Part shown: positions 5,648 to 25,867 of the stretch, in pieces
Layout: the number at the start of each line of letters is the position of its first letter
Numbering within the stretch: position 1 is the stretch's first letter
Source of the DNA: Macrostomum hystrix
Taxonomy: Eukaryota > Animalia > Platyhelminthes
NCBI GenBank assembly: GCA_950097015.1
Contig: CATNEN010000001.1
Coordinates: 12,462,001 to 12,526,000 of the forward strand
Direction of reading: 5' to 3'
DNA: 64,000 nucleotides
Program-made: the position numbers and the translations under genes
Notes under the pieces: model-generated
What the model was told of the DNA's origin: nothing
Databases searched by the model: none
Seen by the model: the letters and a program-made list of their open reading frames with translations, nothing else

Positions 5648-6054
5648 ATGATTTCATTCCAGATGCTCTGCAGCCTGCTGTGTCTGCAGTCCATTGTTTC
5701 TGGTGTCACCGTCCGCCTCAGCGTCGTCTCTGCCTGTCCCAGGAGCATCACCGACCTGTCGCTGGTCAAGGGAGTTCGAGATCCTCGGACCTGCTCGGTG
5801 GAGTGCGCTCTGAGACCGAACTGCACCGCCGTGTTCAAGCGAGACGACTCTTGCTACCTGGCCAATCTCACTCAGTATGAGGCTCTGTGGACACCTCAGG
5901 ACTGCGTAGGTTGTCCCAATTTCACCCGCAGGTTGTGCTACACAGGCTGCCAGCTGAAGCTGCTTCAAGCACCAATACAAATTCTGCGGCCGCAACTGGC
6001 ACACCTGCAAGGGCCTTGAATGAATGTACTCCACTGGGAGTACACTTTTATTAA
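5648..6054 (+). CDS. PAN-core gene with collapsed intron (type-A tail); either read-through frame ending 6019 or 26-nt intron 5906-5931
   Basis: Signal peptide MISFQMLCSLLCLQSIVSG and the shared core. Downstream sequence matches the intron end and exon 2 of the 9415 copy, but most of the intron and its donor are deleted. Confidence 0.6.
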
Positions 6055-6355
6055 ATGTTTTTTTTACTTTAATAAACACCGTGCGGTCCAGTCCGAGTAC
6101 GGATATTTGACTGTTACTTGCTTGGCAGTATTCGAATGACTATATTTAGTAAATTGCTTGTATTTAGTGAAAAAGTACATTAAATGATGGTTGGTCAACA
6201 ACTAAAACAAAGTGCAAGATAACTTGAATCTCAGTAGAAGTTTTTAACAGCAATATTTTGAGACGAATCTTTAATTTATTAGAATCAGAATCAGTGAAAT
6301 TTAAACAAACTATATCCGGAAAACCCGAAATATAGTTTTTAAACAAACTATATAG

Positions 6356-6668
6356 AGGTTGTAGCCTAGTGGTTAGGGCGTCGGACTCACGACTTGAAGG
6401 TCGGGGGTTTGATTCCCGACTCCCCTGAACAATTTGTGTCCTTTAGCAAGACACTTAACTCTGCATTGCTTCAGTTCACCCAGCTGTTAAATGGGTACCA
6501 GCATCAGCTGGGATAATTGAAGGTGGGTGTGGCGTCCCCCCAGTCGATGGACTGAACAGCTGTACGCAGCCTTCAGATGCGCCGCGCATTAGCTGCGGCT
6601 GTGCTGTCGGCTGCACATCTGGCCCAATTGGGGCAGGTGTAATCAATAAAATAAAAATACAATACAAT
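6356..6668 (+). mobile_element. tRNA-derived SINE-A with CORE-like domain, full length
   Basis: A-box TAGCCTAGTGG, B-box-like GGTTTGATTCCC, segment TGTGTCCTTTAGCAAGACACTTAAC...CTGTTAAATGGG resembling the MIR CORE, A-rich tail; several copies in the window. Confidence 0.8.
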
Positions 6669-7742
6669 ATCCGGAAACGTTTGTTTAAACGCTCAATGTC
6701 ATTGTTAAAGGAAATTGCAGTTTTTTGGTTCATCTGAAGCCACATCTGTACCGATTTAAACAAACGGATGCATGCTACCTATAGTAAAGTAGAATTGTTT
6801 GACAAAGTCTAAACTGTGGAAGTTAAGAATAGATGAACTGATATTGTAAAGCTAAGAATTTATAGAGTGAAATAAACTGTCAACATATACTTTTTGACTA
6901 AATATGTTTTTAACAGATATTTTTGTTTCTACCACAAGCTGTATTCTCTTATAGATGCGAATACCGTCATTACGTGCGCTGATGTAATGGGAAAATGCGA
7001 AAATTTCCCAAATGTGTTTAATAAATATTCTTAGAGAAATTTCGACATATGTTACTCATAAGTGTATAAAGTAATACGAGTATAATCGGGACATGGGTTT
7101 TATAATTTATCAAAAGATAAAGAAATCAAAAGCAAGTTACGTACATGCGCAATTGTACGGTAGGAAAGACATCTTGGTGCACTTATTTTTAAACCAGGAG
7201 GTACAGTACTGTATGAACTTAGTACTCGCGAACACTTAGCTGTGCGTCACAATGTCTCAGCAGGCAGCTCATATGCGACTTTTACGCTCATTGCTATTAG
7301 GGAAATCCGTGTCATGCGATCAAGAGTTGACCACTATGACCATTGCGATGACTGACGAAGCGAAACAATGTAACACCCATGTGTCTAGTTAAAATACACT
7401 GCGCGAATGGGAAACGGTTGTCTATATAAACGAGACACCTGGAAGGCACAATACTCAGACTTTTCCGGCGATAGGCCTATAAAGGAGACTCTCACGGGTC
7501 TGGGAGTTTGCTCAACCAGTGCAGACCTCCCCGGTGTGCGTGGCATACCCAGCCGAAAGCTTTCAACTAACGGTTCAGTCCTAACGGCCTCTGCAGTGGG
7601 CGACTCAAGTTGATCGTATAGTGAGCAATACTAAGAATACTTTGGCCAGATTAGAACTACTTCAATTAATATCGATTCTCTGACGAAACTATCTTGACCC
7701 TATCTGTCAGAGAGGTCGGAAGATTCAGATTGTGTGCATTCT

Positions 7743-8781
7743 AGCAACAACAACAACAACAACAACAAGAGACGCTAGCCCCAAAAGTCAGGGAGGCAGC
7801 GTCAGATGGCGCGCCGCAGAGCCAGCGCGCGAACATGGTCCGCGCCGGTGGCAGTGTCGGGCGCCCCGGCGTCGCTCAGCAAGCAGTCGACATAGCGGCG
7901 GGTCCGAGCCTGGCCGCGCCTGAACGGGCCCTGCAGGGTGAGCAGCAGGACGTCCTGGGCAGGCTGGCGGCAGTAGCTCTCGGCCCGAATAACGTGGCCC
8001 GCTAGCCGAAGTCGCCGCTGGCGCAGGATGGTGGACGGGCGTTGCAGCTGGGCTCTCTCGTACAGAGCCTCGGTCCCGACGCTCTCGTAGGCTTGAAAGG
8101 CCGCACGGAGCAGCCCCGAGTGCGCCGAGTCCAGCTGCCGCTCTAGAGTAGCTGTCAGCGTCCACGGCTCGGCGTTGTACAGCAGGACGGTCTCGACCAC
8201 CGCCTGCCACAGCCGAGCCCTCTGGCGTTCAGGCAGCGCTGTGGACTGGAGGACGGCCCGGATCGAACGGTAGGCCGCCCATGCGAGTCCTCTGCGCCGC
8301 CGGATGTCCTCTTCCACGTTGGGCACCAGACCGCCGAGGTAAGTGAACCGCTGGCAGCGTGCGAGCAAGATTCTCTGCCCGTCTGCGCCGCGGCACGTCA
8401 GGTTCGCTGGAATGTCGGCCGGCACGGTTAGCACCTCGGTCTAAAGCGTGTTGATCACTAGGCCGACGCTTGATGCCACCTCAGCCAACCTGTCAATCTG
8501 GCGCTGGGCACCTTCAACAGTCGAGGACAGGAGGGCGAGGTCGTCGGCGTAGCCAAGCACGCTAAGGCGCTTCTCATCGTGGCGGCGACCGATGCGTCTG
8601 CGCAGCAGGAAGCCGTCTTCAGCCGAGGGGAGAGCAGTCCGAAGCACCCAGTCCAGGAGAAGCACGAAGAGGAACGGGGCCAGCGTGTCGCCCTGCAGCA
8701 CTCCTGACGAGGTGGCAAACAGGTCGGACAGGCCGTCCGCCGTAACAACAGCAGCGCGCGTGTCGCGAGATTATAACGCGC
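7743..8781 (-). mobile_element. 5'-truncated RTE-like non-LTR retrotransposon (RT C-terminal part), inactive
   Basis: GVLQGDTLAPFLF, YADD, FTYLG and RRLRLAGHVIR motifs; one in-frame TAG at 8441-8443; (TTG)n 3' tail at ~7745-7768; candidate TSD GTGCATTCT at 7734-7742 and 8782-8790. Confidence 0.9.
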
Positions 8782-9414
8782 GTGCATTCTGCAAGAGCAG
8801 AAGGCCGAGAACCACACAAAAAATTAAGGCTGGATCTACCTGGACTGTCTATCTTATTTAGACTTTATCACAGCGTCTCCAGCACCAAGCACTACCTAAC
8901 TAGATCCCAGATCATACATATCATATCAACAAAGTAAAGTCGAACCAAACACTTTGCATACCTTCGATAATTAGTCCTGTTTTCTCAATCACATTTTTGT
9001 GAGTCCTTTCCCATTTCTTTATTATGAAGAGCAAGCAACGCTACTTAAAAGTTCGCAACTTCAAGCAAACAAACAATTTTTTTCTGCTTAGCTTTAGTCT
9101 TAAATACAAGCACCATTGTTTCTCTAAACAAGCTCTGATTGACGATTTTGAAAGTAGGCAGAAAAATGTATGCCTCAAGTCAAATGCGCTACCCTTAAAA
9201 GCAAGCTCCATTATTTTTACGCGAATGAACACACACAATGCATTTTCCATTGATGACCGTATAAATATTTCCAAAGCTTTTAAAACGGAAAAAAAGCATA
9301 AAAGGTTCCTTTCAGGCAACATATCCTTTCTGCTGACATCCGAGCTCCTGTTTAATGTCAGGAGCTCAAATTTTTAAACCGTCAGTTCAGCTCAAGTTTT
9401 TTTGCTAAGTACTG

Positions 9415-9885
9415 ATGAAGGCAGTCATTGCTTTTGTCAGCCTGCTAAGCCTGCTTCCCGATGCGAAGGGAGTCACCATCCGCCTCAGCGTCGTCTCCGC
9501 CTGTCCCAGGAGCATCACCGACCTGTCGCTGGTCAAGGGAGTTCGAGATGCTCGCTCCTGCTCGGTGGAGTGCGCTCTGAGGCCGAACTGCACCGCCGTG
9601 TTCAAGCGAGACGACTCTTGCTACCTGGCCAATCTCACTCAGTATGAGGCTCTGTGGACACCTCAGGACTGCGTCAGCGAGGTCTGTGACTGATAATTTA
9701 GGATTTGTACAGTTTATTTCCTCGTGCAGCTCTAATGCATGTTGTCGCCCCAATTCCACCCGCAGGTTGTGCTACACAGGCTGCCAGCTGAAGCTGCATC
9801 GAGCACCAATACAAATTCTGTGGCCGCAACTACCACACCTGCTGGTGGCTTGAATGAAGGCCGCCCGAAGCTTCTCTTGGATTAA
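9415..9885 (+). CDS. Secreted PAN-core protein with type-A Ala/Ser/Thr tail (exons 9415-9681, 9766-9885)
   Basis: Signal MKAVIAFVSLLSLL and shared core; phase-0 GAG|GTCTGT...CCGCAG|GTT; exon 2 VVLHRLPAEAASSTNTNSVAATTTPAGG...LD*. Confidence 0.8.
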
Positions 9886-10339
9886 ATTCCCTATTTAGAA
9901 TAGCTTAATTAGAACTAAGTCGACTTAAACGTGCAATTTTTGTGTCGAATCATACGTATTGGTCGATTGATAATCTGTTGTGATTTAGAGAAATAATTTA
10001 GACACCAATCCTATTTTAGAAAACTTTGAATGGCTGAAACGTCGATTCAATATTTCAAATGCCCTCGTGTTCTGAGGGAGAAAAACAGCGTGCTATTTTA
10101 ACTGTTATAGCTTTAGTTACTTCTTTAGTTGCCAGAACTTACCCAGAAAGTGGCTTCTGAAAAATTCACATAAAATCAGCTTTCTGTGATAGAACACATC
10201 ACAAGAGGGTATGCAATTTTACCACAGCTTCAAAATTCTCAAATTAAAAAATTGCGGAACATATAGGTCAACCAGCAGTATTAGCATCGATGCTAAAACC
10301 CAAACTATCGATTGTGCCAGTGTCAGAATGCGCTTTGAG

Positions 10340-10410
10340 ACTTGCTACCTGGCCAATCTCACTCAGTATGAGGCTCTGTGGACACCCCAGAACTGCGTCA
10401 GCGAGGTCTT
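10340..10410 (+). pseudogene. Fragment of the PAN core (3' third plus donor)
   Basis: CYLANLTQYEALWTPQNCVSE|GTCT, nearly identical at DNA level to the core; no upstream part. Confidence 0.8.
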
Positions 10411-10494
10411 TGTCTGCTTGTTTATAACTTAATGACTATTCTGAACTACGTGACTGCAACAATTGTATTCTTACTGTACCTATGCAAGACAGCA

Positions 10495-11124: not shown

Positions 11125-11380
11125 CCGCAGACATTTCACTGACTCCTGAGCACACACGCACACAGATACTGTACTCAGGTATACGCTCACACAGGTGTGT
11201 ACATCTGCCCTGACTTTCACATCGTCAGGCGGAGTACACTTTCACTGTGCCTTGGAGATTGGCCCTCTAGATTGTAAATTGCACGACAAGCGGCGTAGCC
11301 TTGACTGCGCCCCAAATAAATGTGACCGCGCCGCGGAATCGAGCTGCTCAGGTACCTGGTGCGACCACTCTGCCACTCAC
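11125..11380 (-). mobile_element. SINE-B copy, degenerate
   Basis: Similar to 17305-17606. Confidence 0.7.
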
Positions 11381-12845: not shown

Positions 12846-13820
12846 TAGCATGATGCATCTAGGATTCTAGGGGATAGCATGGTGAATCTAGGGGATAGCA
12901 TGATGTGTCCAGGGGATAGCATGATGCATCTAGGGGATAGCATGATGCATCTAGGGGATAGCATGGTGCATCTAGGGGATAGCATGGTGCATCTAGGGGA
13001 CAGCATGGTGCATCTAGGGGACAGCATGGTGCATCTAGGGGATAGCATGGTGCATCTAGGGGATAGCATGGTGCATCTAGGGGATAGCATGGTGCATCTA
13101 GGGGATAGCATGGTGCATCTAGGGGATAGCATGATGAATCTAGGGGATAGCATGGTGCATCTAGGGGATAGCATGATGCATCTAGGGGATAGCATGATGA
13201 ATCTAGGGGATAGCATGGTGCATCTAGGGGATAGCATGGTGCATCTAGGGGATAGCATGGTGCATCTAGGGGACAGCATGGTGCATCTAGGGGATAGCAT
13301 GGTGCATCTAGGGGATAGCATGGTGCATCTAGGGGATAGCATGGTGCATCTAGGGGACAGCATGGTGCATCTAGGGGATAGCATGGTGCATCTAGGGGAT
13401 AGCATGATGTGTCCAGGGGACAGCATGGTGCATCTAGGGGATAGCATGGTGCATCTAGGGGATAGCATGGTGCATCCAGGGGATAGCATGGTGCATCTAG
13501 GGGATAGCATGGTGCATCTAGGGGATAGCATGATGAATCTAGGGGATAGCATGATGTGTCCAGGGGATAGCATGATGCATCTAGGGGATAGCATGATGAA
13601 TCTAGGGGATAGCATGATGTGTCCAGGGGATAGCATGATGTGTCCAGGGGATAGCATGATGTGTCCAGGGGATAGCATGATGTGTCCAGGGGATAGCATG
13701 ATGTGTCCAGGGGATAGCATGATGTGTCCAGGGGATAGCATGATGTGTCCAGGGGATAGCATGATGTGTCCAGGGGATAGCATGATGTGTCCAGGGGATA
13801 GCATGATGTGTCCAGGGGAT
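12846..13820. repeat. 21-bp minisatellite (GGGGATAGCATGGTGCATCTA)n
   Basis: Tandem array; explains the MLSPRCT/LGDSMVH ORFs. Confidence 0.97.
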
Positions 13821-14301
13821 GCACCATTCTTCCCCCAAAAGTGTAAAACTGGTAGTTTAATTTTAAAATATGAAATGGAATGACATACAAAGGCCACAAT
13901 AATTTAAATTGTATCACGTCTGCAAACAAAGAATATTTTCTTTCAAAAAAACCAAACGGCTCAAAGGCAGACGTCAAAGACCGAAAATGCTAATTGGCAC
14001 TTTCCTGACTTGATGAACAATGTGCCCTAACTTTCGAGTTTTAATTGAAAGTAGGAAAATAAAGAGAAATACGGGATACCTGTTGGTGCTGGTAGCCTAA
14101 TAAATCAGAAGCAATTCGTGTAGGCCGAAATTGGTTCCTTTGAGTCCTAAGTAGAACAGCGCTTAAAGAAAGCGGCCTGCTGATTGGACTACGGGTTGCT
14201 AGCAAAATATTCAAAAAGGAAGCCATTGCAAATATACTGCACATCTGTCTTGAAACACCTGAGAGAACCAAATAATTAAGACAAAAAACACTACAGATAA
14301 T

Positions 14302-15033
14302 ATGCTAAGGAGAACCAAGTCGATGCTGTCCGTCTGCATTTTGCTGTGTCTGCTTTCTAATTCGAAGGGCGTCACCGTCCACCTCAGCGTCGTCTCCGCC
14401 TGTCCCAGGAACATCACCGACCTGTCGCTGGTCAAGGGAGTTCGAGATGCTCGCTCCTGCTCGGTGGAGTGCGCTCTGAGACCGAACTGCACCGCCGTGT
14501 TCAAGCGAGACGACTCTTGCTACCTGGCCAATCTCACTCAGTATGAGGCTCTGTGGACACCTCAGGACTGCGTCAGCGAGGTCTGTGACATTGTGTTCCT
14601 ACTTTTACTAGTCAACGGGTGTCCAGTACACTAAAAATTAGCACGGCTTTTATATTTACTCATCTAGGATTCAGTCGTCATAGGCTTCAGTTGTGTCATG
14701 CTTTATTCACTTTTTTGTTACAATTAGTATTTAATCGTGCAGTTTTTCATTCACCCATTCGGTTTTCAGGTGGTATTTGAAAGATTGTCCTATACCTTTC
14801 TGAATCCACTGACTACCCTGAATAGAAACCCGACATCTAAAACTGGCACTGCTATGTCTCCAGTGCCCACAGCCTCTGGTCCTGTCTGCTACTCAAACTC
14901 ACAATCCTGCACCGTTGATTTCGTGCGCGAGTGCGGCAGTGACGTCACGTACCTGCGCTGCTCAAATGGAAGGTATGTTAGTATGCCGTGCTCACCAGGT
15001 ACCAGTTGGTCTGCTGGCAACTGTCCGACGTAA
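14302..15033 (+). CDS. Secreted PAN-core + Thr/Pro linker + CBM14/peritrophin-A-like six-Cys module (exons 14302-14580, 14770-15033)
   Basis: Signal MLSVCILLCLLSNSKG and core; phase-0 splice; C-terminus CYSNSQSC...ECGSDVTYLRCSNGRYVSMPCSPGTSWSAGNC fits the Y..C..G....pC.pGt.W...C chitin-binding type-2 pattern. Confidence 0.75.
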
Positions 15034-16213
15034 TTAACACCTGCAGTTTTGCATGATGCACTGATGACAAGAATTACACTTTTTTAACTTATCTTAACTG
15101 CTCGCGAAAAGAACTCGATAAAGCGAAAGTTTGAGCTTCGTAACGAAACAAGTACATATTCGCTAGTGAATTTGAAGAGGTCCTCATTACCCTAAGCACC
15201 GGCATTAAAAAAGGCTTAAAAAGCGTCAGCGTTTTTAGTTTTTATTGTCTTTTAGAAGTGTGAGCCGTTGTTTGATCTGCACAGTCTATCGAAAAAAGTG
15301 TCCTTCGTGTGAGTCTGCGATCATGTTATTCTGGGATTAAGCTAGTATTACATTTGTATTTAACTTCTTCGAAGCAATTACAGTAGGGTATATCAAAACG
15401 CATTGACCAAAGAGCATTGCATAAGTCTTGATTGAAATGACCCGGTGTCTCATTTAAACACGGTTTGTCATTATTGATTTGCTGCTGACTATTTTTCAGG
15501 CGAGATTTAGGCTAAGACGAAAGACGGAGTGTCGATTGGCGGGGCTCTTTTAATTTTAAAAAGGCCTGCTTGTACCTATTGACTTTCAGCTAGCAATGCC
15601 ACTATTTGAATTCCACTATACAAAAAATGATAATCTTGGTTGTGCTCAACCGATTTTTATTAGCTTTAGTGTTACTTCGAGTAGTATTGTCGAGAAATTC
15701 ACATCAAACTAATTCAAACACTCAAGTTTTAGAGGCTGATTTCAACTAAGTTCTTTTATACCCCCACAGTCAGACAAAGAAGCCACAGTGCTTATCCTCA
15801 TCAGTAAAAAACGCATCTTAAAATACGCGAGAAATTGAAGTCTTCCTCAAATGCTTAGCTGCAATTTCTAAATTAAAAAATATGCTTTGGACAAAACGTG
15901 CATTGTCGCTTTTGTGTTATTGAAATATTTAGCTAGAAAACAATAGGGGACGGTGGCCTGCCCTGCCGGATGAAGCAGCATGTGGTGAACAAATAAAATT
16001 AGAACTACTAGAGGCAGCGAACTAGCTCTCCGTTTCCATTCACGATGCTTGGCTGTTGAGAGTTCTGCCGACATTTCCTGCTCGTCAAATGAAAAGCTTT
16101 TAATTGACACGCACGGAGTACAAAAAGGGAACGAATTGTTAAAGCACTCGGTGCGGAGCTAATATTGTACAACAACGTCTACAGACAGCTCCTTTCATAG
16201 CCTGGGCCCTGAA

Positions 16214-17005
16214 ATGCACAAGCTAAACGGCCACGGCTTCATTATTTTAGCGGTCATAATAGCCACAGTGAGGGCTCAACATGATTGTCAGAAAATGCAA
16301 GGCTACACAATGGCGAATGAATCCGTGTTCTCGATGCCGATACATTATCAATCTCTGTCTTCAGTTGCATCCGAGCTGCAGTGCGCGCTAAAGTGCAGCG
16401 CCCAGCCCACCGTCTGCTTCGGCTTCTACAGGCTGGTCAGGGCGGCAGATTGCCGACTATTCAACACTTCGGCCTACTTCAGCCCAACACAATGGATTGC
16501 AAGCGACGAACGCGTCAATATCTACACAATGTCATCTAGTGGTAAATAAAAAGTGCAAACGTAATCTATCTAGTTTGCTACATGACTGTAAATACAGGTA
16601 ATGATGTTGTTTAAAATCACAGGGTCACCTCTCCGTATCATTGGATGCAGTCAATGCTCCACATACGACAATAAAACCTGCGACTTAGCCATTGACGGAA
16701 ATACGAATCAGGCGCACAACTCTTTATCATGTAGCCACACGTTTGACGGCGCAAGCCAATGGTGGGAGGCGCAGCTGGCCCAGGTGTCTCGCATCTCAGC
16801 TGTAAAGATCTACAACAGGCAGGACTGTTGCGCTGAACGACTCAACAATTTCACACTGTCCATTGATGGCATTGAGTGCGCCAGATTTGACACGGACGTG
16901 AGCTTCTCAGTGCGAACGTTCGACTGCGTCGGCTACGGCAGTCGGGTTCGCCTTACAAACTGCTTGCCAGCAGTGTTCAGCCTGTGCGAATTCCAGCTGT
17001 TCTGA
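16214..17005 (+). CDS. Secreted PAN/Apple + F-type lectin (fucolectin) protein (exons 16214-16541, 16623-17005)
   Basis: Signal peptide; PAN-like CALKC...CFGFY...CRLF; phase-1 intron G|GTAAAT...ACAG|GG; LAIDGN, CSHT, WW and YNRQDCCAERL (F-type lectin H...RxD....R fucose-binding motif). Confidence 0.88.
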
Positions 17006-17304
17006 GCATCACTTAGCTCGCTAGTTCATTCAGACTCGAAAATATAATGTGTTTTCTTCTTATGAAACTAAACTTTGCAGAATTCGGTTAAATATACAGC
17101 CAGTGGGACAGCCATGCTTCTGAAGGCCGTTCAGCTGTTTAGTCTGGGGAGGCCGCCTGAATTTCTGCCCTTATACAGCTGTGTAAACAGAAGGAAATTT
17201 ATCCAAGACATTTAAGAAGCGCTTCCTTTGTGTTGAGATACGAACTAGCGACCTCTCTTTCTGAAGCTCTAAACACAGGTCAACAAGATAATAACTGATA
17301 ATTA

Positions 17305-17606
17305 CAATTGCAGGAGGGCTGTGGGAACTGGCCCATCATCTGGTGACACTAGACCCGCAGCCAGCGAGGAGGCAATTCTGCCCATCTTGCTGACTCCTGA
17401 GCACACTCACACGGATACTGTACGCAGACACATCGTCAGGCAGAGTACACTTTCACTTTGCCTTGGAAATTGGCGCTCAAGAGTGTAAATTGCAAGCCCC
17501 CAAGCCTTCTCTCCACGGCTGCGCCCCAAATGAATGTGGCCTCGCTGCGGAATCGAGCTCAGGGACCTTGATGCGAGAGGCGAACGCAATCGACCGCTCT
17601 GCCACA
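17305..17606 (-). mobile_element. tRNA-derived SINE-B, near full length
   Basis: tRNA-like head TGGCAGAGCGG...GCTCGATTCC; at least 7 related copies in the window. Confidence 0.75.
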
Positions 17607-18259
17607 CAACATTGAAGCTTTCTTAGATCGTCCCGAAACTTAGATAAACCCTGTTTTTGTGGCTCTAAAATAACCATTAATTATTTTTTAACAAATTTTT
17701 ATTTTTATTTTGGTAATCAATTAAGAGAGAGCCTGACATTAGCATTAAAACAATACTTAAAAAAACTAGACAACCATGGTCAAATATTCAGATGGGACTG
17801 CGATTGTAGCCACCAATTCAAATGGAACATTTATTTACTTTCATTTTAAAGTCTTAAAGTAAGCAAGAAGTCTGCTGTTAAATAGATAACAAAATCCTCC
17901 ACTTCATATCAGAAAAAGAATGCCAACAAAGGTGCACACTACAAGCACCCCAAGCTCGTAGAATGCAACTCCCATGTCCGTCACATCAACAGCTGCCAGA
18001 TTCGATGATTTTTATGACTGACAGGTTGCACTGTATAGAAAATCAGTTTTTATCATCTAAAAGGTAGAACAATCATTTCATAATTTCATTTTAGCCCTTG
18101 TCAATCTACTCTCCAGAAGCTTGGCTCGAGAGCCGGACTTGGTTGGAATATGATTGGATGCCAGAAAATGAATAACATTTTTAGACCGAATGGAAACGAG
18201 AAAATTATCCAAAACTTTGTCAGCATCATTTTAGTGACTACAGTCCAACTCCTCGTGAA

Positions 18260-18786
18260 ATGCCCTTTAACCCGCATTCGCCACTGAGGGCTTTCACCGC
18301 CTTTTACCTGCTAAGCCTTCTGTCCGTGGTATCGGGCGTCACAGTCCGCCTCAGCGTCGTCTCCGCCTGTCCCAGGAGCATCACCGACCTGTCGCTGGTC
18401 AAGGGAGTTCGAGATGCTCGCTCCTGCTCGGTGGAGTGCGCTCTGAGACCGAACTGCACCGCCGTGTTCAAGCGAGACGACTCTTGCTACCTGGCCAATC
18501 TCACTCAGTATGAGGCTCTGTGGACACCTCACAACTGCGTCAGCGAGGTCTGTGTACGGTCATTCTTTTGAAACAGATATCAAATTATTTCGTTGGAACA
18601 GCTGCTTTCAAACTATCCAATCTGCAGGTTGTACTAGAACGTCTTTTATCTGCAGCTCCGACAGGCACCACGAGAGCTGCTTCAGGCTCCGTTAAAGGTT
18701 CGCCTGCTGCACCGGGCAAGGCTACCAGAAGCGAGGATACAAGTCCTATAAGGCCTTTTGTTGATTCTGTCCATTCACTTCTGTAA
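18260..18786 (+). CDS. Secreted PAN-core protein with type-C Ala/Pro/Ser tail (exons 18260-18547, 18628-18786)
   Basis: Signal ...FYLLSLLSVVSG and core; phase-0 splice; exon 2 VVLERLLSAAPTGTT...SLL*. Confidence 0.78.
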
Positions 18787-19497
18787 TCGTTCTGAAAAAA
18801 AGTTTTGTTGCTATGTGACACTGAAACATAAAATCTACAATTTTCGAGTAAAAAATCGAAATATTCGGCGATGCGGCCAATAAATAAGTACCTGTTATTT
18901 TCGTGCGATTAAAAGTATATGGCCTCTAAATGAATATAAGTCTGTCCGAATAAAATTTAGTTTTTGGTAGTACTTCAGTTTTTCCCTTTGTTCTGACAAC
19001 AAAGTCGGATGTTTTGAATATCCGGATTTTGGAAATACGCGCTCGTAGGACGAGTAAATTCTGTAATTTGTTTGCTTTTGGCAAGAATAATTTAAAGACA
19101 CCGCTAAGTTGATGTGAATGCTGCCTCGTTGCTTTTAAAAGGAGGGGTCTTTATAGATTCAAGATGGACGAAAAATGCATAACGGATAACCTAGTTGCCA
19201 GCAGTCAAAGCTCTGCATTACTGTTGATTGGTTAGAATTAAATCTAAATGCGCAGTCAGTTTGAAGCCAAATCAGATTTCTTTATAGATTAATCTACAGA
19301 ATAAATGCCGTCGAATTGAAATTGTCATGCAACGCGCTTGATAGCTAATGAACTCAAAGTTTTGTTTATTTGCATGCAAACGTAAATCAGGAAAAATTAT
19401 TACTCATTCCCATAAGTGGTACAGCCTTGTACAAACTGCTCGATCGGTTCGTCAATAATACATACCCCTTAATTTTCGTGAATCTAAGACATTGGGA

Positions 19498-19973
19498 ATG
19501 AGGAAAGCTTTTGTTTCCTCTGCTTTATTCTTAGCCTGATTTCGATTGGGTCAGGTTCCAGAATCCGCCTCAGCGTCGTCTCCGCCTGTCCCAGGAACAT
19601 CACCGACCTGTCGCTGGTCAAGGGAGTTCGAGATGCTCGCGCCTGCTCGGTGGAGTGCGCTCTGAGACCGAACTGCACCGCCGTGTTCAAGCGAGACGAC
19701 TCTTGCTACCTGGCCAATCTCACTCAATCTCGACTCTTGCTCACTACAGTTGACCAGCACTGTTGCAAAGTCTGACCTTCTGTATATCTTCGACTTTTTT
19801 ACTTGCAGGTTGTTCTCAGTAAATTGTCTTTTATCGGTGCTGCTGACACTACACTTGCTAATTCAGGGACATCAGTGTCGACTGAGACTAGAACAACAAC
19901 AAAAACAACAACAACAACAACAATAACACGTGTTGGCTATGTCCAGACGATTTTGGGAGGCATTTTGGGCTAG
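19498..19973 (+). pseudogene. PAN-core pseudogene with type-D tail
   Basis: ATG is out of frame with the signal peptide and core; the core is truncated after NLTQ so the donor is lost; the exon-2 remnant matches 21862-22155. Confidence 0.75.
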
Positions 19974-21494
19974 TTCAGCCGTGAAAAGTAACCTAAATTT
20001 AGGTTTTTGTAGCAAACCATTGCAAAATTCGAAGTTTATTGGAAAATATGTTGCGCAACGAATAATTTTTCCTACGACCCGAGAGTTGCTGATACGAGCG
20101 TACTAAACATGCCTGTACGAAAACTCTTTTCCTACACTTTAATATAGTTATCTCGCAAATTCGCAAGTGACAAAGTCCATATGTTAACAACTTGGAGTGC
20201 TTTTAGTTGAATGAATTCAACTAATGATATAATTTTTTCACATTAGAAAGCTTTTATCCGAATCATTTTTGCATTAGCTGGCATGCGGCGTGCAATCGTT
20301 TCATTTCAGATGAAACTATGAGAATGCAACACCTGTCAGTTCAGAGATGTCAGTTAATGAATGCTGGACAATTTGAACTGCTTGAATTTCGATGCAACTA
20401 CTTGAATCCGTCCTTCACTCTGAGCCAAATTGTTTCGAAAGCATTCAAATCTGGATATACATCAATAGGGGGGAATTTTCTGAAAACACCGGATATTCAC
20501 CTGCAAGTGCCATTGAAATTTGCGCTTCAAGTAAATTTGCGCCATTCATGCTCAAATAAAAACTAGATTTAGCTGAAATATGATAGCTGCTTTATAGACA
20601 AATTTTCAGATTTTTTCAGGACTGAAAAGTTTGCATCAGCTGTTGCAGATAATCTCGTATCTGCTAAGGGTTAAACTCATGACGGTGGTTGATGGATTGA
20701 GCGATAAAACGGCCTGTTCTCACACCAGAGTCCCTCATGTTTAATCTTAGCTTGACTCGAAGTCTGAGCTATATCTGACACCTGAGGACAAAGAAATATA
20801 CATAGTGGTGCAAAACAATAGAGAATTAACAGAAACACTTGCAAGTTATATTAAATTATAAGATTTCACACTTTTTAATCCTCGTTATTCACGCACCAGT
20901 AGTAGCTTTTCGTGGAATACAGCCAATAACGCGTCGTTTTTCAGATTCTTGATTAAAAATGACTAAAATATCAAGTTTTGTAGAAATATTTTTAAGAAGA
21001 GTAACCGATTTTTCGAGAATACGAGATAAGCTTATATAAAAAGTCACCACCCTACTGGCACGTATAGGATACTAACATTAACAACAGTAGGACAGTAGCA
21101 GTAGATGGCTCCTACAAAAAACTGCTTTGCATGTCGGTTATGGAATTTCATTGGGACAAATGCGCTTTAGCCAGAGCTTATTAATGAGCGAGACTTTTAT
21201 TTCTGGCATCGTGTGCTGACACGAGCTCATTGTTCTGGAGTTGGTAGACCATGAGTGATTGAAACGCATTAAAAAGCATTAATACCCAGATGGTTATGAA
21301 TTCGTTAACTTTGCCTTTCAACAACAACAATGATAAAAATCTCAATGAAATAGAGATTCAAACGATTGAAAAGCTAAGTTTTGTATCTGAAATGTTAATG
21401 AAGAATTTTTCAAAACCAAATGCATTTGCCGAACATCCCTGGTGAGAATTATGCTCGGTCCTGGATTTTGAAACAATAAAAATCTGCAAGCCTA

Positions 21495-22155
21495 ATGGAT
21501 TCGATTCTGGGAGTCTGCGTGTTGCTGGGCCTGCTGTCCGTCGTTTCGGGCGTCACCATCCGTCTCAGCGTCGTCTCCGACTCTCCCAACATCACCGACC
21601 TGTCGCTGGTCAAGGGTGTTCGAGATGCTCGCTCCTGCTCGGTGGAGTGCGCTCTGAGACCGAACTGCACCGCCGTGTTCAAGCGAGACGACTCTTGCTA
21701 CCTGGCCAATCTCACTCAGTATGAGGCTCTGTGGACACCTCAGGACTGCGTAGCGAGGTCTGTGACTGTTTTTTAATCCGTGATCTATCAAGCTCACTAC
21801 AGTTGACCTGCACTGTTGCAAAGTCTGATTTTCTGTCTATTTTCGACTTTTCAAATTGCAGGTTGTTCTCAGTAGATTGTCTTTCATCGGTGCTGCTGAC
21901 ACTACACTTGCTAATTCAAGGACATCAGTGTCGACTGAGTCGAATGCTTTAGTCACGACTGTGCCTTCGGAAAGTGAAACGACCGTTTCTCGGACCAGAA
22001 CGATTTCGACTGTTGGAGATGTCTCAACCACAGCACATCAGCTTGCTATGATCGGGTCGACGACTTCAAGAATTGAAGGTAAAGAAAGCTTCCAGAGTTT
22101 CTACTGCGGAGACAAGAACAAGAACAACAAGAACGACAACAAAAACACGTGTTGA
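21495..22155 (+). pseudogene. PAN-core gene with Ser/Thr-rich type-D tail (exon 2 21862-22155), probably defective
   Basis: First core Cys lost (SDSPNIT). A 1-nt deletion before the donor (GTAGCGAG vs GTCAGCGAG) shifts the splice phase. Confidence 0.6.
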
Positions 22156-22699
22156 CTTTGTCCAGGATTTTTAGGGAGGCGTTTTTGGCTAGTTTAGTCA
22201 TGAAAAGTAACCTAACTTTACGCGTTCGTTAACCTAAACTTGTCTTTTTGGAAGATATGTTGCGCAACGTATTATCTTTCCCGAGAGTTGTTGACTGTAA
22301 AAGTACATTTTTCCTTACGATGCGGGAAAGGATCTTGAAAATAGAACTTTTTTATTACGTAGCGAAATATAAACCTATTGGTGAATAATGCTTTGATAGA
22401 TGCTGAAAAGAGCTGGCAATCTTTTGATAATGCGAGTACCAACTCGGATCTTACAAAACGGCATATCAACAATAGCGAAAAGAGGCCCAGTACTTCCTTG
22501 CTGTTGTTGCCTGTCCTATAAATCTATAAGTCTTCTACGCCTTGTCACAATGTCAAGATGCGACTGTCGCAAAGAATATTCAGAATTTTTAATAGGAATC
22601 TTAAAGCCAAACAGAACGCTACTTGGAAATTCGCAACTTCAAGCAAAATAAACAAGGTATATATTGTCTGCTTAGCTTATTCCTAAATATAAGCAACAC

Positions 22700-24463
22700 A
22701 GTAGTGTTACTTTTGATTATATCTTTTGTTCTGATGGTTCAAATAATGTGATTTGACACAGTCTTATAGCGGCAAGTCTCTTCTTTATATTAATTCAAAT
22801 CTTTTTTCTAACAGACTAGGGAAAGAGAAGTTATCAACGAAAAACTAACAGGACCTCAAACATAGACTTACAGTAAATCAACAAGCAAGCAAAAATGACC
22901 AACAGTTGAGTGGTTGCGAATATGAAGTTTTCTCGTAGCAATTGAAACGCTCCTCTTCACTCGTCGGTGGGAATGCTTGACTTCTCAACGTAGTCACCGC
23001 CGAGCTGAAGGCATTTTTGCCACCGACTGAACAAACCGTCAATAGCGTTGGCATAACTCTCGCGTGGAATTTTGTGGAGCAGGACATTCCGCACTGCCTG
23101 TTCAAGGTTGTCACGGTTCTCATGAACCTTACCTCGCAGATGCGACTTCATTAGTGGAAATAAGGCGAAATCTGCTGGCGCCAGATCAGGCGAATACGGT
23201 GGATGAGGCAAAATATTAAACTTGAGTCTGCTGACAGCCTCGGAGGTCTTCTGTGCAGTATGGGGTCTGGCGTTGTCGTGGTGGAGAAGAAAGGGCTTGA
23301 TTCCAACCCGACGCTTGTTCCAGATTTCGAACTTCAATTTTTCAAGGGAAGCAATATAGCACTCGGCATTGATGCTCTTCCCTGGCTCAAGAAATTCGAT
23401 TGTAAGTGGTCCATTTCTGTCGAAGAACAAAGTCAGAAGCACCTTTTTGCAGTGAGGCTCTCGACGTGCCTTAACAGGGGGGTCTGAACCCCTGATTGTC
23501 CAAACCTTGGACTCCTGTTTGGTGGGGGGATCGAAGTGAGGCACCCACGTCTCGTCACCAGTAACAACGATTTGCCGAAACGTTTCCCATCCACCATGTT
23601 GCCTGACGAGCTCCAGATTCTCCTGGCACACTCGCTGCCGCTGCTCTTTCAGGTCTGGTGTCAGAAGGCGTGGAATCCAGCGAGCACTCAGCTTCACATA
23701 ATCCATGCTGGTGAGACTTCGATGAACCGTTGATCGCGGAGTATTCAGCCTGTCAGCAATCTCTCTGATCGTCATTCGTGCGTCCTCATCAAGAAGATCC
23801 AAGATAGCGTCAGCCAGGACGTCAGAGTCTCGAACATGAGGGCGACCTGTCCTGAGCTGATCAGCAAGGTCCGTCCTTCCCGCTCGAAACTGTTCTATCC
23901 AACGATAGATAGTCATTTTACTGACCGCGCAAGACCCATGAGCTGATGAAAGTTGCGCGTGAATCTCGGCTGCACTGTGCCCCGTCTTCCAAAGGGTGTA
24001 AATCACACTCCTCTGGGCAAAACTTGAATGCACATCCATGATCTTTAGCACAGCAAGAAATGAGAAAAAAAATTCTCGTACTGAAGCCAAGTCCAAGTGA
24101 GAGATATGAAGATTTCATTCCATCTTTTCCAGAGACAACTTTCAAATTATAACTTCATTATGATTTTTCCAGAGACATATCATTGTCACGGATTGAGAAA
24201 TTGAGAAATTTTGGTTGAAAGAGTGACCTCAGTCAAAAGCACTTTCGTAGCATTCCGATAGCTTGTTGATTTACTGTAAGTCTATGTTTGAGGTCCTGTT
24301 AGTTTTTCGTTGATAACTTCTCTTTCCCTAGTCTGTTAGAAAAAAGATTTGAATTAATATAAAGAAGAGACTTGCCGCTATAAGACTGTGTCAAATCACA
24401 TTATTTGAACCATCAGAACAAAAGATATAATCAAAAGTAACACTACTTTTGGGACAGCCCTCG
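22700..24463 (-). mobile_element. mariner element with ~200-bp TIRs (22700-22886 remnant; 24261-24463)
   Basis: Inverted repeat matching over ~187 bp; right end ...CAGCCCTCG|TA; left TIR lacks its outer 16 nt. Confidence 0.92.
22957..24039 (-). CDS. mariner (DD34D) transposase, intact ORF of 360 aa
   Basis: HTH region, WIPRLL, TGDETW, HHDNARPH, YSPDLAPADF; 34 residues between the second and third Asp. Confidence 0.95.
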   Translation of the reverse strand: MDVHSSFAQRSVIYTLWKTGHSAAEIHAQLSSAHGSCAVSKMTIYRWIEQFRAGRTDLADQLRTGRPHVRDSDVLADAILDLLDEDARMTIREIADRLNTPRSTVHRSLTSMDYVKLSARWIPRLLTPDLKEQRQRVCQENLELVRQHGGWETFRQIVVTGDETWVPHFDPPTKQESKVWTIRGSDPPVKARREPHCKKVLLTLFFDRNGPLTIEFLEPGKSINAECYIASLEKLKFEIWNKRRVGIKPFLLHHDNARPHTAQKTSEAVSRLKFNILPHPPYSPDLAPADFALFPLMKSHLRGKVHENRDNLEQAVRNVLLHKIPRESYANAIDGLFSRWQKCLQLGGDYVEKSSIPTDE

Positions 24464-24817
24464 TATAAGCAACACGGCTGCAGGTCCGGACAAGACCAAT
24501 GCGCAGCTATTAGTGCCATTGTTTCGCTGAACAAGCTTTGATGGACGATTCTGAAAGTAGGCAGAGAAATCGAAGTCTAAAGACAAATGCACTACCCTAA
24601 AAAGCTAGCTACATTTTTTTACGCGAATGAAACACACACTTTGCATTTTTTATCGATGACTTTAGAAATATTTCCAAAGCTTTTAAAACGGAAACAAAGC
24701 ATAAAAGACTCCTTTCAGGCAACATATCATTTCTGCTGACATCGGAGCTTAAGTTTAATGTCAGGAGCTCAAATTTTTAAACCGTAATTTGAGCTCAAGT
24801 TTTTTTGCTAAGTACTG

Positions 24818-25867
24818 ATGAAGGCAGTCATTGCTTTTGTCAGCCTTCTGAACCTGCTTCCCGATGCGAAGGGAGTCACCATCCGCCTCAGCGTCGTCTC
24901 CGCCTGTCCCAGGAGCATCACCGACCTGTCGCTGGTCAAGGGAGTTCGAGATGCTCGCGCCTGCTCGGTGGAGTGCGCTCTGAGACCGAACTGCACCGCC
25001 GTGTTCAAGCGAGACGACTCTTGCTACCTGGCCAATCTCACTCAGTATGAGGCTCTGTGGACACCTCAGGACTGCGTCAGCGAGGTCTGTAGCCCTGTGG
25101 TACTGCATATTCTTGTCAAGGGGTGTCCAATTTTCGAACTAATATGGATCCGCCACCGGAGTTTATACAGAGCAATTAGCTGTCCTCGTCCCCGAAGTCT
25201 TCAACGAGAATCGCTGACTATCTCGACGATGATGAGGTCGGACGGCTTTGAAAGTTGGTTCATCGCGTAAAGAGCAGACAATTTTGATTCATACGTTAGT
25301 CTTTCAAGAGAATCGGTCATTCAGTTTGGGAGCTTTCGTGAAGTAGGCATTGAATATATAGCGTTTCCTTGTCTTTCCCCAGGGGGCAAATAGCTTGGTC
25401 GTTTTGCTGTTTACTGTTTTTTCTTGAAAAAATCTGAGCCATGATCGTACAATAAGTTTAGAATTATTAACTGCATTTCTTTCTTCATAAAGTGTATTTG
25501 TAAACAGTCGCCGTAGGCTTTAGTTGCGTCATGTTTTATTTAGTTTTTTTATTTTATCGTACAGTTGTTCATTCACGTCTTTGGTTTTCAGGTGGTATCC
25601 GAAAGATTGTCATCAACATTTTTGAATCTAACAGTGCTGACTACCCTGAATAGAAACCCGACAACATCTAAAACTGGCACTGCTGTGTCTCCAGTGCCCA
25701 CAGCCTCTGGTCCTGTCTGCTACTCAAACTCACAATCCTGCACCGTTGATTACGCGCGCGAGTGCGGCAGTGACGTCACGTACCTGCGCTGCTCAAATGG
25801 AAAGTATGTGCGCGTGTCATGCTTTCTGGGTACCAGTTGGTCTGCTGGCATCGTCCGATGTAATTAA
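24818..25867 (+). CDS. Secreted PAN-core + CBM14-like protein, chimera of the 9415-type 5' end and the 14302-type 3' exon (exons 24818-25084, 25592-25867)
   Basis: Upstream region and signal peptide nearly identical to the 9415 copy; exon 2 and 3' flank nearly identical to the 14770 exon; a small indel changes the last residues (GIVRCN). Confidence 0.78.

What the first reader, a model, noticed from the sequence alone, without database searches (positions are those of the whole stretch)
5648..25867. Tandem secreted PAN-domain family with an invariant core and shuffled 5' and 3' modules
Seen: seven copies (5648, 9415, 14302, 18260, 19498, 21495, 24818) plus a fragment (10340) share ~190 bp (RLSVVSACP...LWTPQDCVSE). 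The stretch is almost identical even at synonymous sites, and identity collapses abruptly on both sides. Signal peptides and upstream regions are mostly unrelated, and second exons fall into classes: A (5648, 9415), B CBM14-like (14302, 24818), C (18260), D (19498, 21495). Inference: the core is homogenised by gene conversion and acts as a crossover point that recombines promoters and leaders with tails. This gives a constant domain with variable appendages, the reverse of usual receptor diversification. The products could be mucus, adhesive, reproductive or glycan-recognition proteins.
Basis: partly seen in the sequence, partly recalled or inferred. Interest (0 to 1): 0.85.

Follow-up and report, generated by a model that had tools for sequence, protein, structure and literature searches.

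The report
Gene conversion keeps PAN-domain exons identical
A cluster of about nine flatworm (Macrostomum hystrix) genes for small secreted PAN/apple-headed proteins keeps a 220-base stretch almost letter-identical by copying between genes while everything around it has drifted apart. This is a clean case of a known process in an unstudied gene family.

Summary
Seven copies and a fragment lie in the window. Two more copies lie on the minus strand just upstream. All share a ~220-nt block that is 94-99% identical, running from 4 nt before the mature N-terminus to ~8 nt into intron 1. The signal-peptide codes differ by 29-55%, and introns and flanks are mostly unalignable.

The genome is Macrostomum hystrix. 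The block encodes a 6-Cys PAN/apple domain. Exon 2 always starts VVxxRL and encodes an S/T-rich or mucin-like tail, with a CBM_19/14-like domain in three of the nine copies (and in one diverged paralogue).

Gene conversion limited to the still-homologous block is the best explanation:
- Where flanks align, K is 0.14-0.33, against 0.01-0.04 in the core.
- Nearest neighbours in the core disagree with those in the flanks.
- Six of 15 informative site pairs fail the four-gamete test.
- Three broken copies and a fragment carry the same core.
- Core differences are mostly non-synonymous.

Independent DNA contigs confirm the junctions and the copy-specific letters, so polishing collapse is unlikely. 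Spliced contigs show that at least two copies are expressed.

"Module shuffling" is shown for one chimera only (24818). The other tail classes look like decay or expansion of one ancestral exon.

The scan had already found the same pattern in other families of this genome. This is a known kind of process, and the proteins' function is unknown.

The parts
5648..6022 (+). Copy c5648 (core 5701-5907). Defective: the last 5 nt of exon 1, the splice donor and the 5' part of the intron are deleted. The frame therefore reads through into a class-A exon 2 out of frame.
   Evidence: Alignments; translation. The core is 2-10 mismatches of 170 from the others.
9415..9885 (+). Copy c9415, intact. Exon 1 is 9415-9681 (signal peptide + PAN core 9468-9689), the intron is 84 nt (GT..AG), and exon 2 is 9766-9885 (class A, a 39-aa S/T-rich tail).
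   Evidence: Its 5' flank and leader match c24818 from -475.
10341..10412 (+). Core fragment. It holds only the last ~65 nt of the core plus the donor, at 96-97% identity, in a non-coding setting. Upstream similarity is weak at best.
   Evidence: (family D7).
14302..15033 (+). Copy c14302, intact. Exon 1 is 14302-14580 (core 14367-14588), the intron is 189 nt, and exon 2 is 14770-15033 (class B: S/T linker + 6-Cys CBM_19/CBM_14-like domain).
   Evidence: Pfam CBM_19 scores 21.4 bits against a cut-off of 20.1. DNA contigs of run X1 confirm both flank/core junctions and the copy-specific letters.
18260..18786 (+). Copy c18260, intact and expressed. Exon 1 is 18260-18547 (core 18334-18555), the intron is 80 nt, and exon 2 is 18628-18786 (class C, a 52-aa S/T/P-rich tail).
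   Evidence: A contig of run X2 (record 14) joins 18545 to 18626, skipping the predicted intron. In run X4, two separate contigs end at 18545 (record 28) and begin at 18626 (record 29).
19498..19970 (+). Copy c19498, a pseudogene. The ATG is out of frame with the core. The core ends at +169, because a deletion removes the end of exon 1, the donor and part of the intron. A class-D exon 2 follows. The core stretch 19563-19726 is still 95-99% identical to the other copies.
21495..22155 (+). Copy c21495, probably a pseudogene. A 3-nt deletion and substitutions remove Cys1, and a 1-nt deletion 8 nt before the donor shifts the phase. Exon 2 is class D (21862-22155). The core is 21548-21765.
   Evidence: An X1 contig carries the same deletion and the A>T change.
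24818..25867 (+). Copy c24818, intact, expressed and chimeric. Its 5' flank, leader and core are 9415-like (24516-25090), and it is 14302-like from the core onward. Exon 1 is 24818-25084, the intron is 507 nt, and exon 2 is 25592-25867 (class B).
   Evidence: Contigs of runs X2-X4 that carry c24818-type letters lie on exon 1 and on class-B exon 2.
2347..2622 (+). Diverged paralogue of the PAN exon (52% amino-acid identity). It lies inside the cluster but does not take part in the homogenisation.
26689..27526 (+). Diverged paralogue (55% amino-acid identity). Exon 1 is 26689-26970 and a CBM-like exon is 27350-27526. It is the orthologue type of M. lignano A0A1I8GJG2.

Best explanation
This is a lineage-specific tandem family of two-exon genes in Macrostomum hystrix.

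**Gene structure.** Exon 1 encodes a signal peptide and a 70-residue, 6-Cys PAN/apple domain. Exon 2 encodes an S/T-rich or mucin-like tail. Three of the nine converted copies (m6210, c14302, c24818) also carry a C-terminal CBM_19/CBM_14-like 6-Cys domain, and one diverged paralogue (p26653) does too.

**What is shown.** The copies are old. Their introns, flanks and tails have diverged to K = 0.14-0.33, or beyond alignment. Repeated non-reciprocal copying (gene conversion) among nine copies, in both orientations, keeps the PAN-coding block 94-99% identical.

**What is inferred.** The block boundaries sit where homology has run out. On the 5' side that is the fast-evolving signal-peptide code, where identity falls off gradually. 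On the 3' side it is the indel-ridden intron, where it falls off sharply. Conversion tracts therefore cannot extend, and the constrained domain, which diverges most slowly, stays within reach of recombination. This feeds back on itself.

At least one exchange with an endpoint in the core made a chimeric gene (24818).

**Function (inferred only).** These are secreted, glycosylated matrix, mucus or glycan-binding proteins. The PAN head is the common binding module. The tails differ in mucin length and in whether a chitin-binding-like domain is present.
For: **Block against flanks**
- 9415/24818: K is 0.146 in the 5' flank, 0.055 in the leader and 0.010 in the core.
- 14302/24818: K is 0.019 in the core, 0.18-0.33 in the intron, 0.094 in exon 2 and 0.20 in the 3' flank.
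- m6210/14302: K is 0.019 in the core and 0.27 in the CBM exon.
- Fisher tests of core against flank give p = 1e-9, 2e-8 and 1e-4.
- All other flank pairs give no BLAST match at all.

**Incongruence**
- c5648 is closest in the core to m6210, which lies on the opposite strand 12 kb away and has a different tail (2 mismatches). It is 6 mismatches from its tail partner 9415.
- 19498 and 21495 share a tail but are 9 mismatches apart in the core.
- Six of 15 informative site pairs show all four haplotypes.

**Not purifying selection**
- About 8 non-synonymous and 4 synonymous differences separate the intact copies.
- Three defective copies and a non-coding fragment carry the same block.

**Age of the copies**
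- In the CBM-like domain, the paralogues m6210 and 14302 are 79% identical, and each is 62-67% identical to M. lignano.
- In the PAN domain the paralogues are 97% identical, and each is 73% identical to M. lignano.

**Assembly check**
- Independent DNA contigs of run X1 cross each flank/core junction with no differences.
- They carry the copy-specific letters at single-copy depth (for example 14381 A at about 77x).
- Among the differences that were listed, the only ones inside a core are letters of other assembled copies.

**Expression**
- A contig of run X2 skips exactly the predicted intron of c18260. Two contigs of run X4 end and begin at the same exon boundaries.
- Contigs of X2-X4 carry c24818-type letters on exon 1 and on class-B exon 2.

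**PAN identity**
- The cysteine pattern is C-x3-C-x5-C-x9-C.
- A phmmer hit (E = 2.6e-10) lands on a stretch that Pfam calls PAN_4.
- The ten nearest ESM Atlas clusters are all PAN.
- The AlphaFold model has pLDDT 82.6, and almost all of the top ~22 structural matches are PAN/apple, MANEC or WSC folds at Z 3.9-6.6.
- UniProt names the M. lignano orthologues 'Apple domain-containing protein'.
Against: - No conversion event is observed directly. There are no haplotype or population data.
- I have no orthologous cluster from a close relative, so the age of the duplications rests on flank divergence and on one domain comparison.
- GC3 of the core (0.71-0.79) is higher than that of exon 2 (0.31-0.52). 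But the non-converting paralogues are equally GC-rich (0.65-0.77), so there is no clear signature of biased conversion.
- Summed word depth over the core in run X1 (roughly 1050-1200, against ~80 for single copy) is rough. It does not exclude a few extra collapsed copies.
- 14 differences were left off the read laying list, so hidden core variants are not fully excluded.
- The Pfam PAN models stay below their curated cut-offs.
- Runs X2-X4 are on record as 'DNA?'. I take them for RNA only because their contigs cover exons and skip introns.
Confidence: 0.85

Rival explanations
1. Module shuffling is the main process. Reciprocal crossovers inside the core repeatedly recombine unrelated promoters and leaders with unrelated tails, and this accounts for the classes.
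For: c24818 is 9415-like on the 5' side and 14302-like on the 3' side, and the switch falls inside the core. The pairs that share a tail (5648/9415, 14302/24818, 19498/21495) have unalignable 5' flanks.
Against: - All tails start with the same VVxxRL motif behind a homologous acceptor and are S/T-rich. The M. lignano orthologues have a single architecture. So the classes are diverged versions of one exon, not unrelated modules.
- Unequal crossover should leave collinear duplicated intergenic DNA. None is seen.
- Two copies are inverted relative to the rest. A crossover with them would invert the region between, so exchange with them must be non-reciprocal.
Confidence: 0.2
2. There is no conversion. 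The block is held constant by selection at the nucleotide level, for example on codon usage, an RNA element or an embedded regulatory sequence.
For: The block is GC- and CpG-rich (17 CpG in 210 nt; GC3 about 0.75) and coincides with the mature domain.
Against: - Frameshifted and truncated copies and a non-coding fragment keep the block.
- The few differences are mostly non-synonymous.
- Four-gamete failures occur within 34-80 nt.
- The diverged paralogues in the same cluster encode the same fold at only 74-81% nucleotide identity, and only over 53-81-nt stretches.
Confidence: 0.03
3. It is an assembly artefact. Short-read (Pilon) or Arrow polishing of a Canu assembly averaged similar copies into one consensus.
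For: The published assembly was polished in several rounds with Arrow and Pilon (PMC10468722). Such polishing can over-correct repeats.
Against: - The block (220 nt) is shorter than a read pair's span, so mates anchor in unique flanks.
- The copies keep private letters and indels.
- Independent k-mer contigs of DNA run X1 reproduce the junctions, the private letters at single-copy depth and the 21495 deletion. Among the differences that were listed, they add no unassembled core variants.
- Contigs of other runs carry the same core.
Confidence: 0.03
4. The core spread recently as an inserted unit, for example as a mobile or captured exon, into genes that were otherwise unrelated.
For: Identity is abrupt at both ends of the block. 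TEs are abundant in the cluster: a mariner element, a high-copy repeat and an RT fragment.
Against: - Leaders, donor, acceptor and the start of exon 2 are homologous in all copies, only diverged.
- There are no repeats or target-site duplications at the block ends.
- The M. lignano orthologues have the same exon architecture.
Confidence: 0.03

Closest known systems
Segment-restricted concerted evolution in tandem gene families. From my own knowledge, not checked here: primate gamma-globin genes, Drosophila amylase duplicates, SIGLEC11/SIGLEC16.
   Same: Non-reciprocal copying keeps one block of paralogues near-identical, including silent sites, while the flanks diverge. Tract ends fall where homology stops. 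Pseudogenes can take part.
   Different: Here nine copies in both orientations share a very short block (~220 nt) that covers just one domain within an exon. The leader in the same exon has escaped.
Schistosoma mansoni polymorphic mucins, SmPoMuc (PMC2576457)
   Same: A flatworm multigene family of secreted mucin-like proteins whose members recombine often, with a conserved domain joined to a variable tandem-repeat part.
   Different: - SmPoMuc has the variable repeats at the N-terminus and a conserved C-terminal part.
- Its diversity is tied to host-parasite compatibility and also arises through expression and splicing.
- There is no sequence relationship to the family here.
- Individual-specific expression was not tested here.
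Other M. hystrix secreted families noted by this scan: PAN-LamG arrays (s1-842787, s1-398627), fibrinogen-type lectins (s1-300439) and the HHAT pair (s1-402520)
   Same: They are in the same genome and, according to those notes, show the same mosaic: near-identical internal blocks inside old, diverged tandem paralogues, often with PAN/apple heads.
   Different: They have different tail domains and different loci. Those notes are unchecked by me.
Macrostomum lignano 'Apple domain-containing proteins': UniProt A0A1I8GKV4 and five cluster mates, and A0A1I8GJG2
   Same: They are the only close relatives among 1.84 billion representative proteins (69% and 54% identity). They have the same architecture: SP, PAN, VVEGRL, S/T linker, CBM_19-like domain.
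   Different: The M. lignano copies are 88-98% alike along their whole length, which fits that species' recent genome duplication. No mucin-repeat or tail-less classes are seen among them. They are unstudied.
Apicomplexan microneme PAN/apple lectins (Sarcocystis SML-2, Toxoplasma MIC4) and other PAN modules (HGF N domain, plasminogen, factor XI apple)
   Same: The predicted fold matches: Z 5.2-6.6 over 61-67 of 70 residues. Several of these bind carbohydrates.
   Different: Sequence identity is only 10-19%. Ligand binding is untested here, so the resemblance is one of fold only.

Membership tests
PAN/apple domain superfamily | Cysteine framework with the C-x3-C-x5-C motif, a following Cys in a 'C[YFW]L' strand, and an outer Cys pair | tested here: met
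   C11, C30-x3-C34-x5-C40-x9-C50(YL) and C67 are present in all intact copies. C30, C34, C40 and C50 are invariant across the alignment that includes bona fide PAN proteins.
PAN/apple domain superfamily | A match to a curated family profile above its gathering score | tested here: not met
   PAN_3 scores 15.3-15.9 bits against a cut-off of 21.1. KIAA0319_N (a MANSC-type PAN relative) scores 20.3-21.3 against 27.
PAN/apple domain superfamily | Significant sequence similarity to domains that do pass the profiles | tested here: met
   phmmer E = 2.6e-10 to P0003 residues 308-348, which Pfam calls PAN_4 (303-347). Hits on P0006 and P0010 also fall inside PAN_1 stretches. ESM Atlas: all ten best named clusters are PAN.
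PAN/apple domain superfamily | Fold: an antiparallel sheet cradling one helix | tested here: met
   The AlphaFold model (pLDDT 82.6) has the order strand-strand-helix-strand-strand-helix-strand. In the VIA-align search, almost all of ranks 1-22 are PAN, apple, MANEC, WSC or AMA1 folds, at Z 3.9-6.6 with 61-69 residues aligned. Z under 8 is modest, so the weight lies in how uniform the list is.
Chitin-binding modules CBM_19 / CBM_14 (class-B tail) | A profile match above the gathering score | tested here: inconclusive
   CBM_19 scores 21.4 bits (cut-off 20.1) for c14302 but 18.6 for c24818, and there is no hit for the 27350 exon. CBM_14 is below its cut-off in all. UniProt names one M. lignano orthologue 'CBM_19 domain-containing'.
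Chitin-binding modules CBM_19 / CBM_14 (class-B tail) | Binds chitin or another glycan | not testable with these tools
   This needs recombinant protein and binding assays.
Concerted evolution by gene conversion | Paralogues are far more alike in one block, silent sites included, than in adjacent homologous sequence | tested here: met
   Core K is 0.01-0.04 against 0.14-0.33 in alignable flanks, with Fisher p from 1e-4 to 1e-9.
Concerted evolution by gene conversion | Reticulate, incongruent relationships between the block and the flanks | tested here: met
   Nearest neighbours in the core differ from the flank partners, and 6 of 15 site pairs fail the four-gamete test.
Concerted evolution by gene conversion | Paralogues are older than the block's similarity implies (outgroup comparison) | tested here: inconclusive
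   The ratio of paralogue distance to M. lignano distance is about 0.6 in the CBM domain and about 0.1 in the PAN domain. That is one domain and one distant outgroup. No close sister-species locus was available.
Concerted evolution by gene conversion | Conversion tracts seen segregating or arising | not testable with these tools
   This needs population or pedigree long-read data.
Secreted mucin-like proteins | A signal peptide plus S/T/P-rich tandem repeats | tested here: met
   All copies have hydrophobic leaders ending in small residues before VT(V/I)RLS (judged by eye, no predictor was run). The upstream copy m3753 has a 305-aa T/S/P repeat exon, and m6210 has about 130 aa of T/S/G/P-rich (TTSAPTTAGG-type) repeats before its CBM domain. 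O-glycosylation is untested.

The most novel reading that the evidence does not exclude
The identical PAN head is not just a by-product. In Macrostomum, many secreted families would keep a common PAN 'constant region' by conversion because all paralogues must dock to the same partner, such as a shared glycan or matrix component. Exchanges inside that block would then create new combinations of promoter/leader and tail (mucin length, presence of a chitin-binding module). That would be a genome-wide, recombination-based way of diversifying a secreted matrix or recognition repertoire around a fixed head.
Probability: 0.1. Interest if true: 0.7.

Novelty: new member of a known kind. Interest (0 to 1): 0.35.

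Why it matters
This is a compact and unusually clean example of how gene conversion and flank divergence carve a "constant" domain out of a tandem family. Nine copies in both orientations take part, including pseudogenes and a fragment.

It also defines an unstudied, Macrostomum-restricted family of secreted PAN-mucin-(CBM-like) proteins. At least two members are expressed.

Other notes of this scan report the same mosaic in further secreted families of this genome. It may therefore be a general feature of how M. hystrix evolves its secreted lectin-like repertoire. That matters for orthology calls, for dN/dS scans of "rapidly evolving" secreted or reproductive genes, and for short-read mapping in this model genus.

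It does not reveal a new mechanism.

Tried and rejected
- **First structure model.** The AlphaFold run with an 11-sequence alignment gave pLDDT 50 and was unusable. A second alignment that added distant PAN proteins gave 82.6.
- **PDB by sequence.** A profile search found nothing. Foldseek gave no E-value at or below 0.001, although PAN proteins led the list.
- **The look-up of encoding contigs.** I therefore could not fetch M. lignano genomic loci, and could not test whether the mosaic exists in a second species.
- **Literature.** Searches for Macrostomum with apple, PAN or chitin found nothing on this family.
- **Sequencing runs.** The search listed no run recorded as RNA. Expression rests on runs X2-X4, labelled 'DNA?', whose contigs behave like transcripts.
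- **GC-biased conversion.** The test was inconclusive, because the non-converting paralogues are equally GC3-rich.
- **Copy number from contig depth.** Inconclusive, because the depths of overlapping contigs are summed.
- **CBM remnants.** tblastn found no remains of the CBM domain downstream of the class A, C, D or mucin-only genes. Their tails have truly lost it and do not hide it in another frame.
- **Mobile-exon idea.** Rejected. The block has no terminal repeats and no copies outside the cluster.
- **Spliced proteins.** Each exon was translated and searched on its own, by reference.

Full report
**What is there**

Repeat finding and alignment confirm seven copies in the window, with ATGs at 5648, 9415, 14302, 18260, 19498, 21495 and 24818. 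They also confirm a fragment at 10341-10412.

The window is G000:C1:12462001-12526000 of a 220-Mb, 42-contig genome. A DNA search of the whole genome finds two further near-identical copies on the minus strand just upstream, at 12455581-12455790 and 12458038-12458247. I call these m6210 and m3753. There are none elsewhere.

A protein search adds three diverged paralogues inside the same cluster, at 52-58% identity. It then finds only distant PAN-domain genes elsewhere in the genome.

The shared block runs from about 4 nt before the first codon of the mature peptide to 5-9 nt past the splice donor, about 220 nt in all. Mean pairwise identity along it:
- about 0.25-0.36 upstream
- 0.51-0.62 in the last 40 nt of the leader
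- 0.86 to 1.00 in the block, with positions 117-156 invariant in all nine copies
- 0.32 and then 0.15 in the intron

Core mismatches are 2-10 of 170. Leader mismatches are 13-25 of 45, except for the pair 9415/24818.

**Organism and relatives**

Among 1.84 billion representative proteins, the only close relatives are two clusters of Macrostomum lignano proteins. UniProt calls them 'Apple domain-containing', and one 'CBM_19 domain-containing'.

That assembly was built with Canu from PacBio reads, polished with Arrow and Pilon, from inbred line SR1 (PMC10468722).

The M. lignano proteins have the order signal peptide, PAN, 'VVEGRL', short S/T linker, 6-Cys C-terminal domain.

**Gene structure**

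Exon 1 holds the leader and the PAN domain. It ends in phase 0 at GAG|GTCTGT. Exon 2 follows a canonical acceptor after 80-507 nt, and in every class it begins VV(L/F/S)x(R/K)L.

Tails:
- Class A: 39 aa, S/T-rich.
- Class B: linker plus a CBM_19/CBM_14-like domain. CBM_19 scores 21.4 bits against a cut-off of 20.1 for c14302, and lower for c24818.
- Class C: 52 aa.
- Class D: S/T-rich.
- m3753: a 305-aa T/S/P tandem-repeat mucin exon.
- m6210: mucin repeats plus the CBM-like domain.

No CBM remnants lie downstream of the other classes.

Six copies look intact: m6210, m3753, 9415, 14302, 18260 and 24818. Three are defective:
- c5648 lost the donor and the 5' part of the intron, and reads on out of frame.
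- c19498 has its ATG out of frame and a deletion from core position +170 into the intron.
- c21495 lost Cys1 and has a 1-nt deletion before the donor.

Each exon was handled separately, by reference.

**The domain is PAN/apple-like**

- Pfam PAN_3 and the MANSC-type KIAA0319_N model hit below their cut-offs.
- The cysteine framework C-x3-C-x5-C-x9-C(YL) is present.
- phmmer links the domain (E = 2.6e-10) to stretches that Pfam calls PAN_4 or PAN_1.
- All ten best named ESM Atlas clusters are PAN.
- A second AlphaFold model reached pLDDT 82.6. Its best structural matches are almost all PAN modules, at Z 3.9-6.6 with 61-69 of 70 residues aligned. They include the plasminogen and HGF N domains, plant SRK, TgMIC4, SML-2, factor XI and kallikrein apple domains, the MANEC domain of HAI-1, WSC domains and AMA1.

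**Why gene conversion**

1. *Flank against core.* Where flanks can be aligned at all, they are much more diverged than the core.

| Pair | Region | K |
|---|---|---|
| 9415 / 24818 | 5' flank | 0.146 |
| 9415 / 24818 | leader | 0.055 |
| 9415 / 24818 | core | 0.010 |
| 14302 / 24818 | core | 0.019 |
| 14302 / 24818 | intron | 0.18-0.33 |
| 14302 / 24818 | exon 2 | 0.094 |
| 14302 / 24818 | 3' flank | 0.20 |
| 5648 / 9415 | core | 0.030 |
| 5648 / 9415 | tail and downstream | 0.097-0.143 |
| m6210 / 14302 | core | 0.019 |
| m6210 / 14302 | CBM exon | 0.27 |

   Fisher tests of core against flank give p = 1e-9, 2e-8 and 1e-4. All other flank pairs give no match.

2. *Core and flank relationships disagree*. 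c5648 is closest in the core to m6210, which has the opposite orientation and a different tail. 19498 and 21495 share a tail but are among the most different pairs in the core. Six of 15 informative site pairs fail the four-gamete test.

3. *The identity is not due to protein-level selection.* The few core differences among intact copies are about 8 non-synonymous to 4 synonymous. One of them makes or removes an N-I-T sequon. The three broken copies and the non-coding fragment carry the same block.

4. *The paralogues look old*. In the CBM-like domain, m6210 and 14302 are 79% identical, against 62-67% to M. lignano. In the PAN domain they are 97% identical, against 73% to M. lignano.

5. *Participation follows similarity, not position.* The diverged paralogues at 2347, at 26689 and just before the window sit inside or beside the array but are not homogenised. 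One of them has its own M. lignano orthologue, A0A1I8GJG2.

**Boundaries (inferred)**

The 5' edge is a gradient through the leader. The 3' edge is sharp, at the indel-rich intron. In c19498 and in the fragment, the identical stretch stops at a deletion breakpoint. This is what homology-limited tracts would give. No special sequence element was found at the edges.

**Artefact check**

I laid contigs of four public runs on 14200-20100. Run X1 is genomic DNA at about 80x.
- Its contigs cross the unique-flank/core junctions of 14302, 18260 and 19498 with zero differences.
- They carry 14302's private A at 14381 at single-copy depth, and 18260's private letters.
- A contig running into the 5' part of c21495's core carries its 3-nt deletion.
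- Among the differences listed, they add no core variants that the assembly lacks. Fourteen further differences were not shown.
- The contigs break inside the core, as k-mer assemblies must.

Summed depth there is too rough to exclude a few extra copies. Because the block is shorter than a read pair's span, polishing collapse is unlikely.

**Expression**

Runs X2-X4 are labelled 'DNA?'. But their contigs cover only exons.
- X2 record 14 joins 18545 to 18626, skipping the predicted intron of c18260. X4 records 28 and 29 are separate contigs that end at 18545 and begin at 18626.
- X3 record 17 splices the neighbouring PAN_1-F5/8C gene.
- X2, X3 and X4 carry c24818-type letters on class-B exon 2, and X3 carries them on exon 1 as well.
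- X4 matches c14302's 3' UTR exactly.

So c18260 and c24818 at least are transcribed and spliced as predicted.

**Shuffling**

c24818 is a true chimera. It is 9415-like from -475 into the core and 14302-like from the core on.

Beyond this one event, the tail classes are better read as decay or expansion of one ancestral exon. No collinear intergenic duplications expected from unequal crossover are seen.

**Comparison and novelty**

Segment-restricted concerted evolution is well known. The flatworm SmPoMuc family is a recombining mucin family with a constant part and a variable part (PMC2576457).

This scan's earlier notes report the same mosaic in other M. hystrix secreted families, among them PAN-LamG arrays, fibrinogen-type lectins and an HHAT pair. 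I did not check those notes.

The present locus is therefore a new and clean member of a known kind, in an unstudied, genus-restricted family whose function is unknown.

Noticed in passing
window 22700-24447: A mariner/Tc1-type element with 187-nt terminal inverted repeats that are 100% identical (22700-22886 and 24261-24447). It has an open 379-aa transposase ORF at 22957-24096 on the minus strand (Transposase_1, HTH_48, DDE_3). It sits between copies 21495 and 24818 and looks young and possibly active.
   Followed up: partly
window ~17155-17745 (relatives at 11186-11364, 26211-26379, 29339-29594): A very high-copy dispersed repeat. In DNA run X1, summed contig word depth reaches about 1.3 million, against about 80 for single-copy sequence. 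Hundreds of contigs end or rearrange there.
   Followed up: no
window 16214-17005 (+): A separate two-exon gene lies inside the array. It has a PAN_1-like head (below cut-off) followed by an F5/8 type C / NedA-like galactose-binding domain (E = 6e-13). Its intron, 16541-16621, is spliced out in a contig of run X3.
   Followed up: partly
window 3490-5258, 12866-13820, 27756-28946, 30703-36598, 41467-43808, 45056-50157 and others: The window is packed with long minisatellite arrays of 15-37-nt units, up to 146 copies each. Some lie between family members. A G-rich array lies inside a nuclear-receptor gene whose ligand-binding-domain ORF is at 38837-39472 on the minus strand.
   Followed up: no
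core position 40 of each copy (e.g. window 14411, 9512): Paralogues differ by N-I-T versus S-I-T, so one N-glycosylation sequon is present in five copies and absent in four. The NCT and NLT sequons are constant.
   Followed up: no
window 58572-59267 (+) and 7802-8434 (-): Two likely remnants of mobile elements: a Pif1-type helicase fragment (Pif1_2B domain, probably Helitron-derived), and an ORF that looks like a reverse-transcriptase remnant but has no Pfam hit.
   Followed up: no
window 18493 (core of c18260), seen in run X2: A G>A difference lies inside the stretch that is invariant among all nine assembled copies. Three further differences lie outside the core in the same contig. This is probably strain polymorphism in a non-reference worm.
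   Followed up: no
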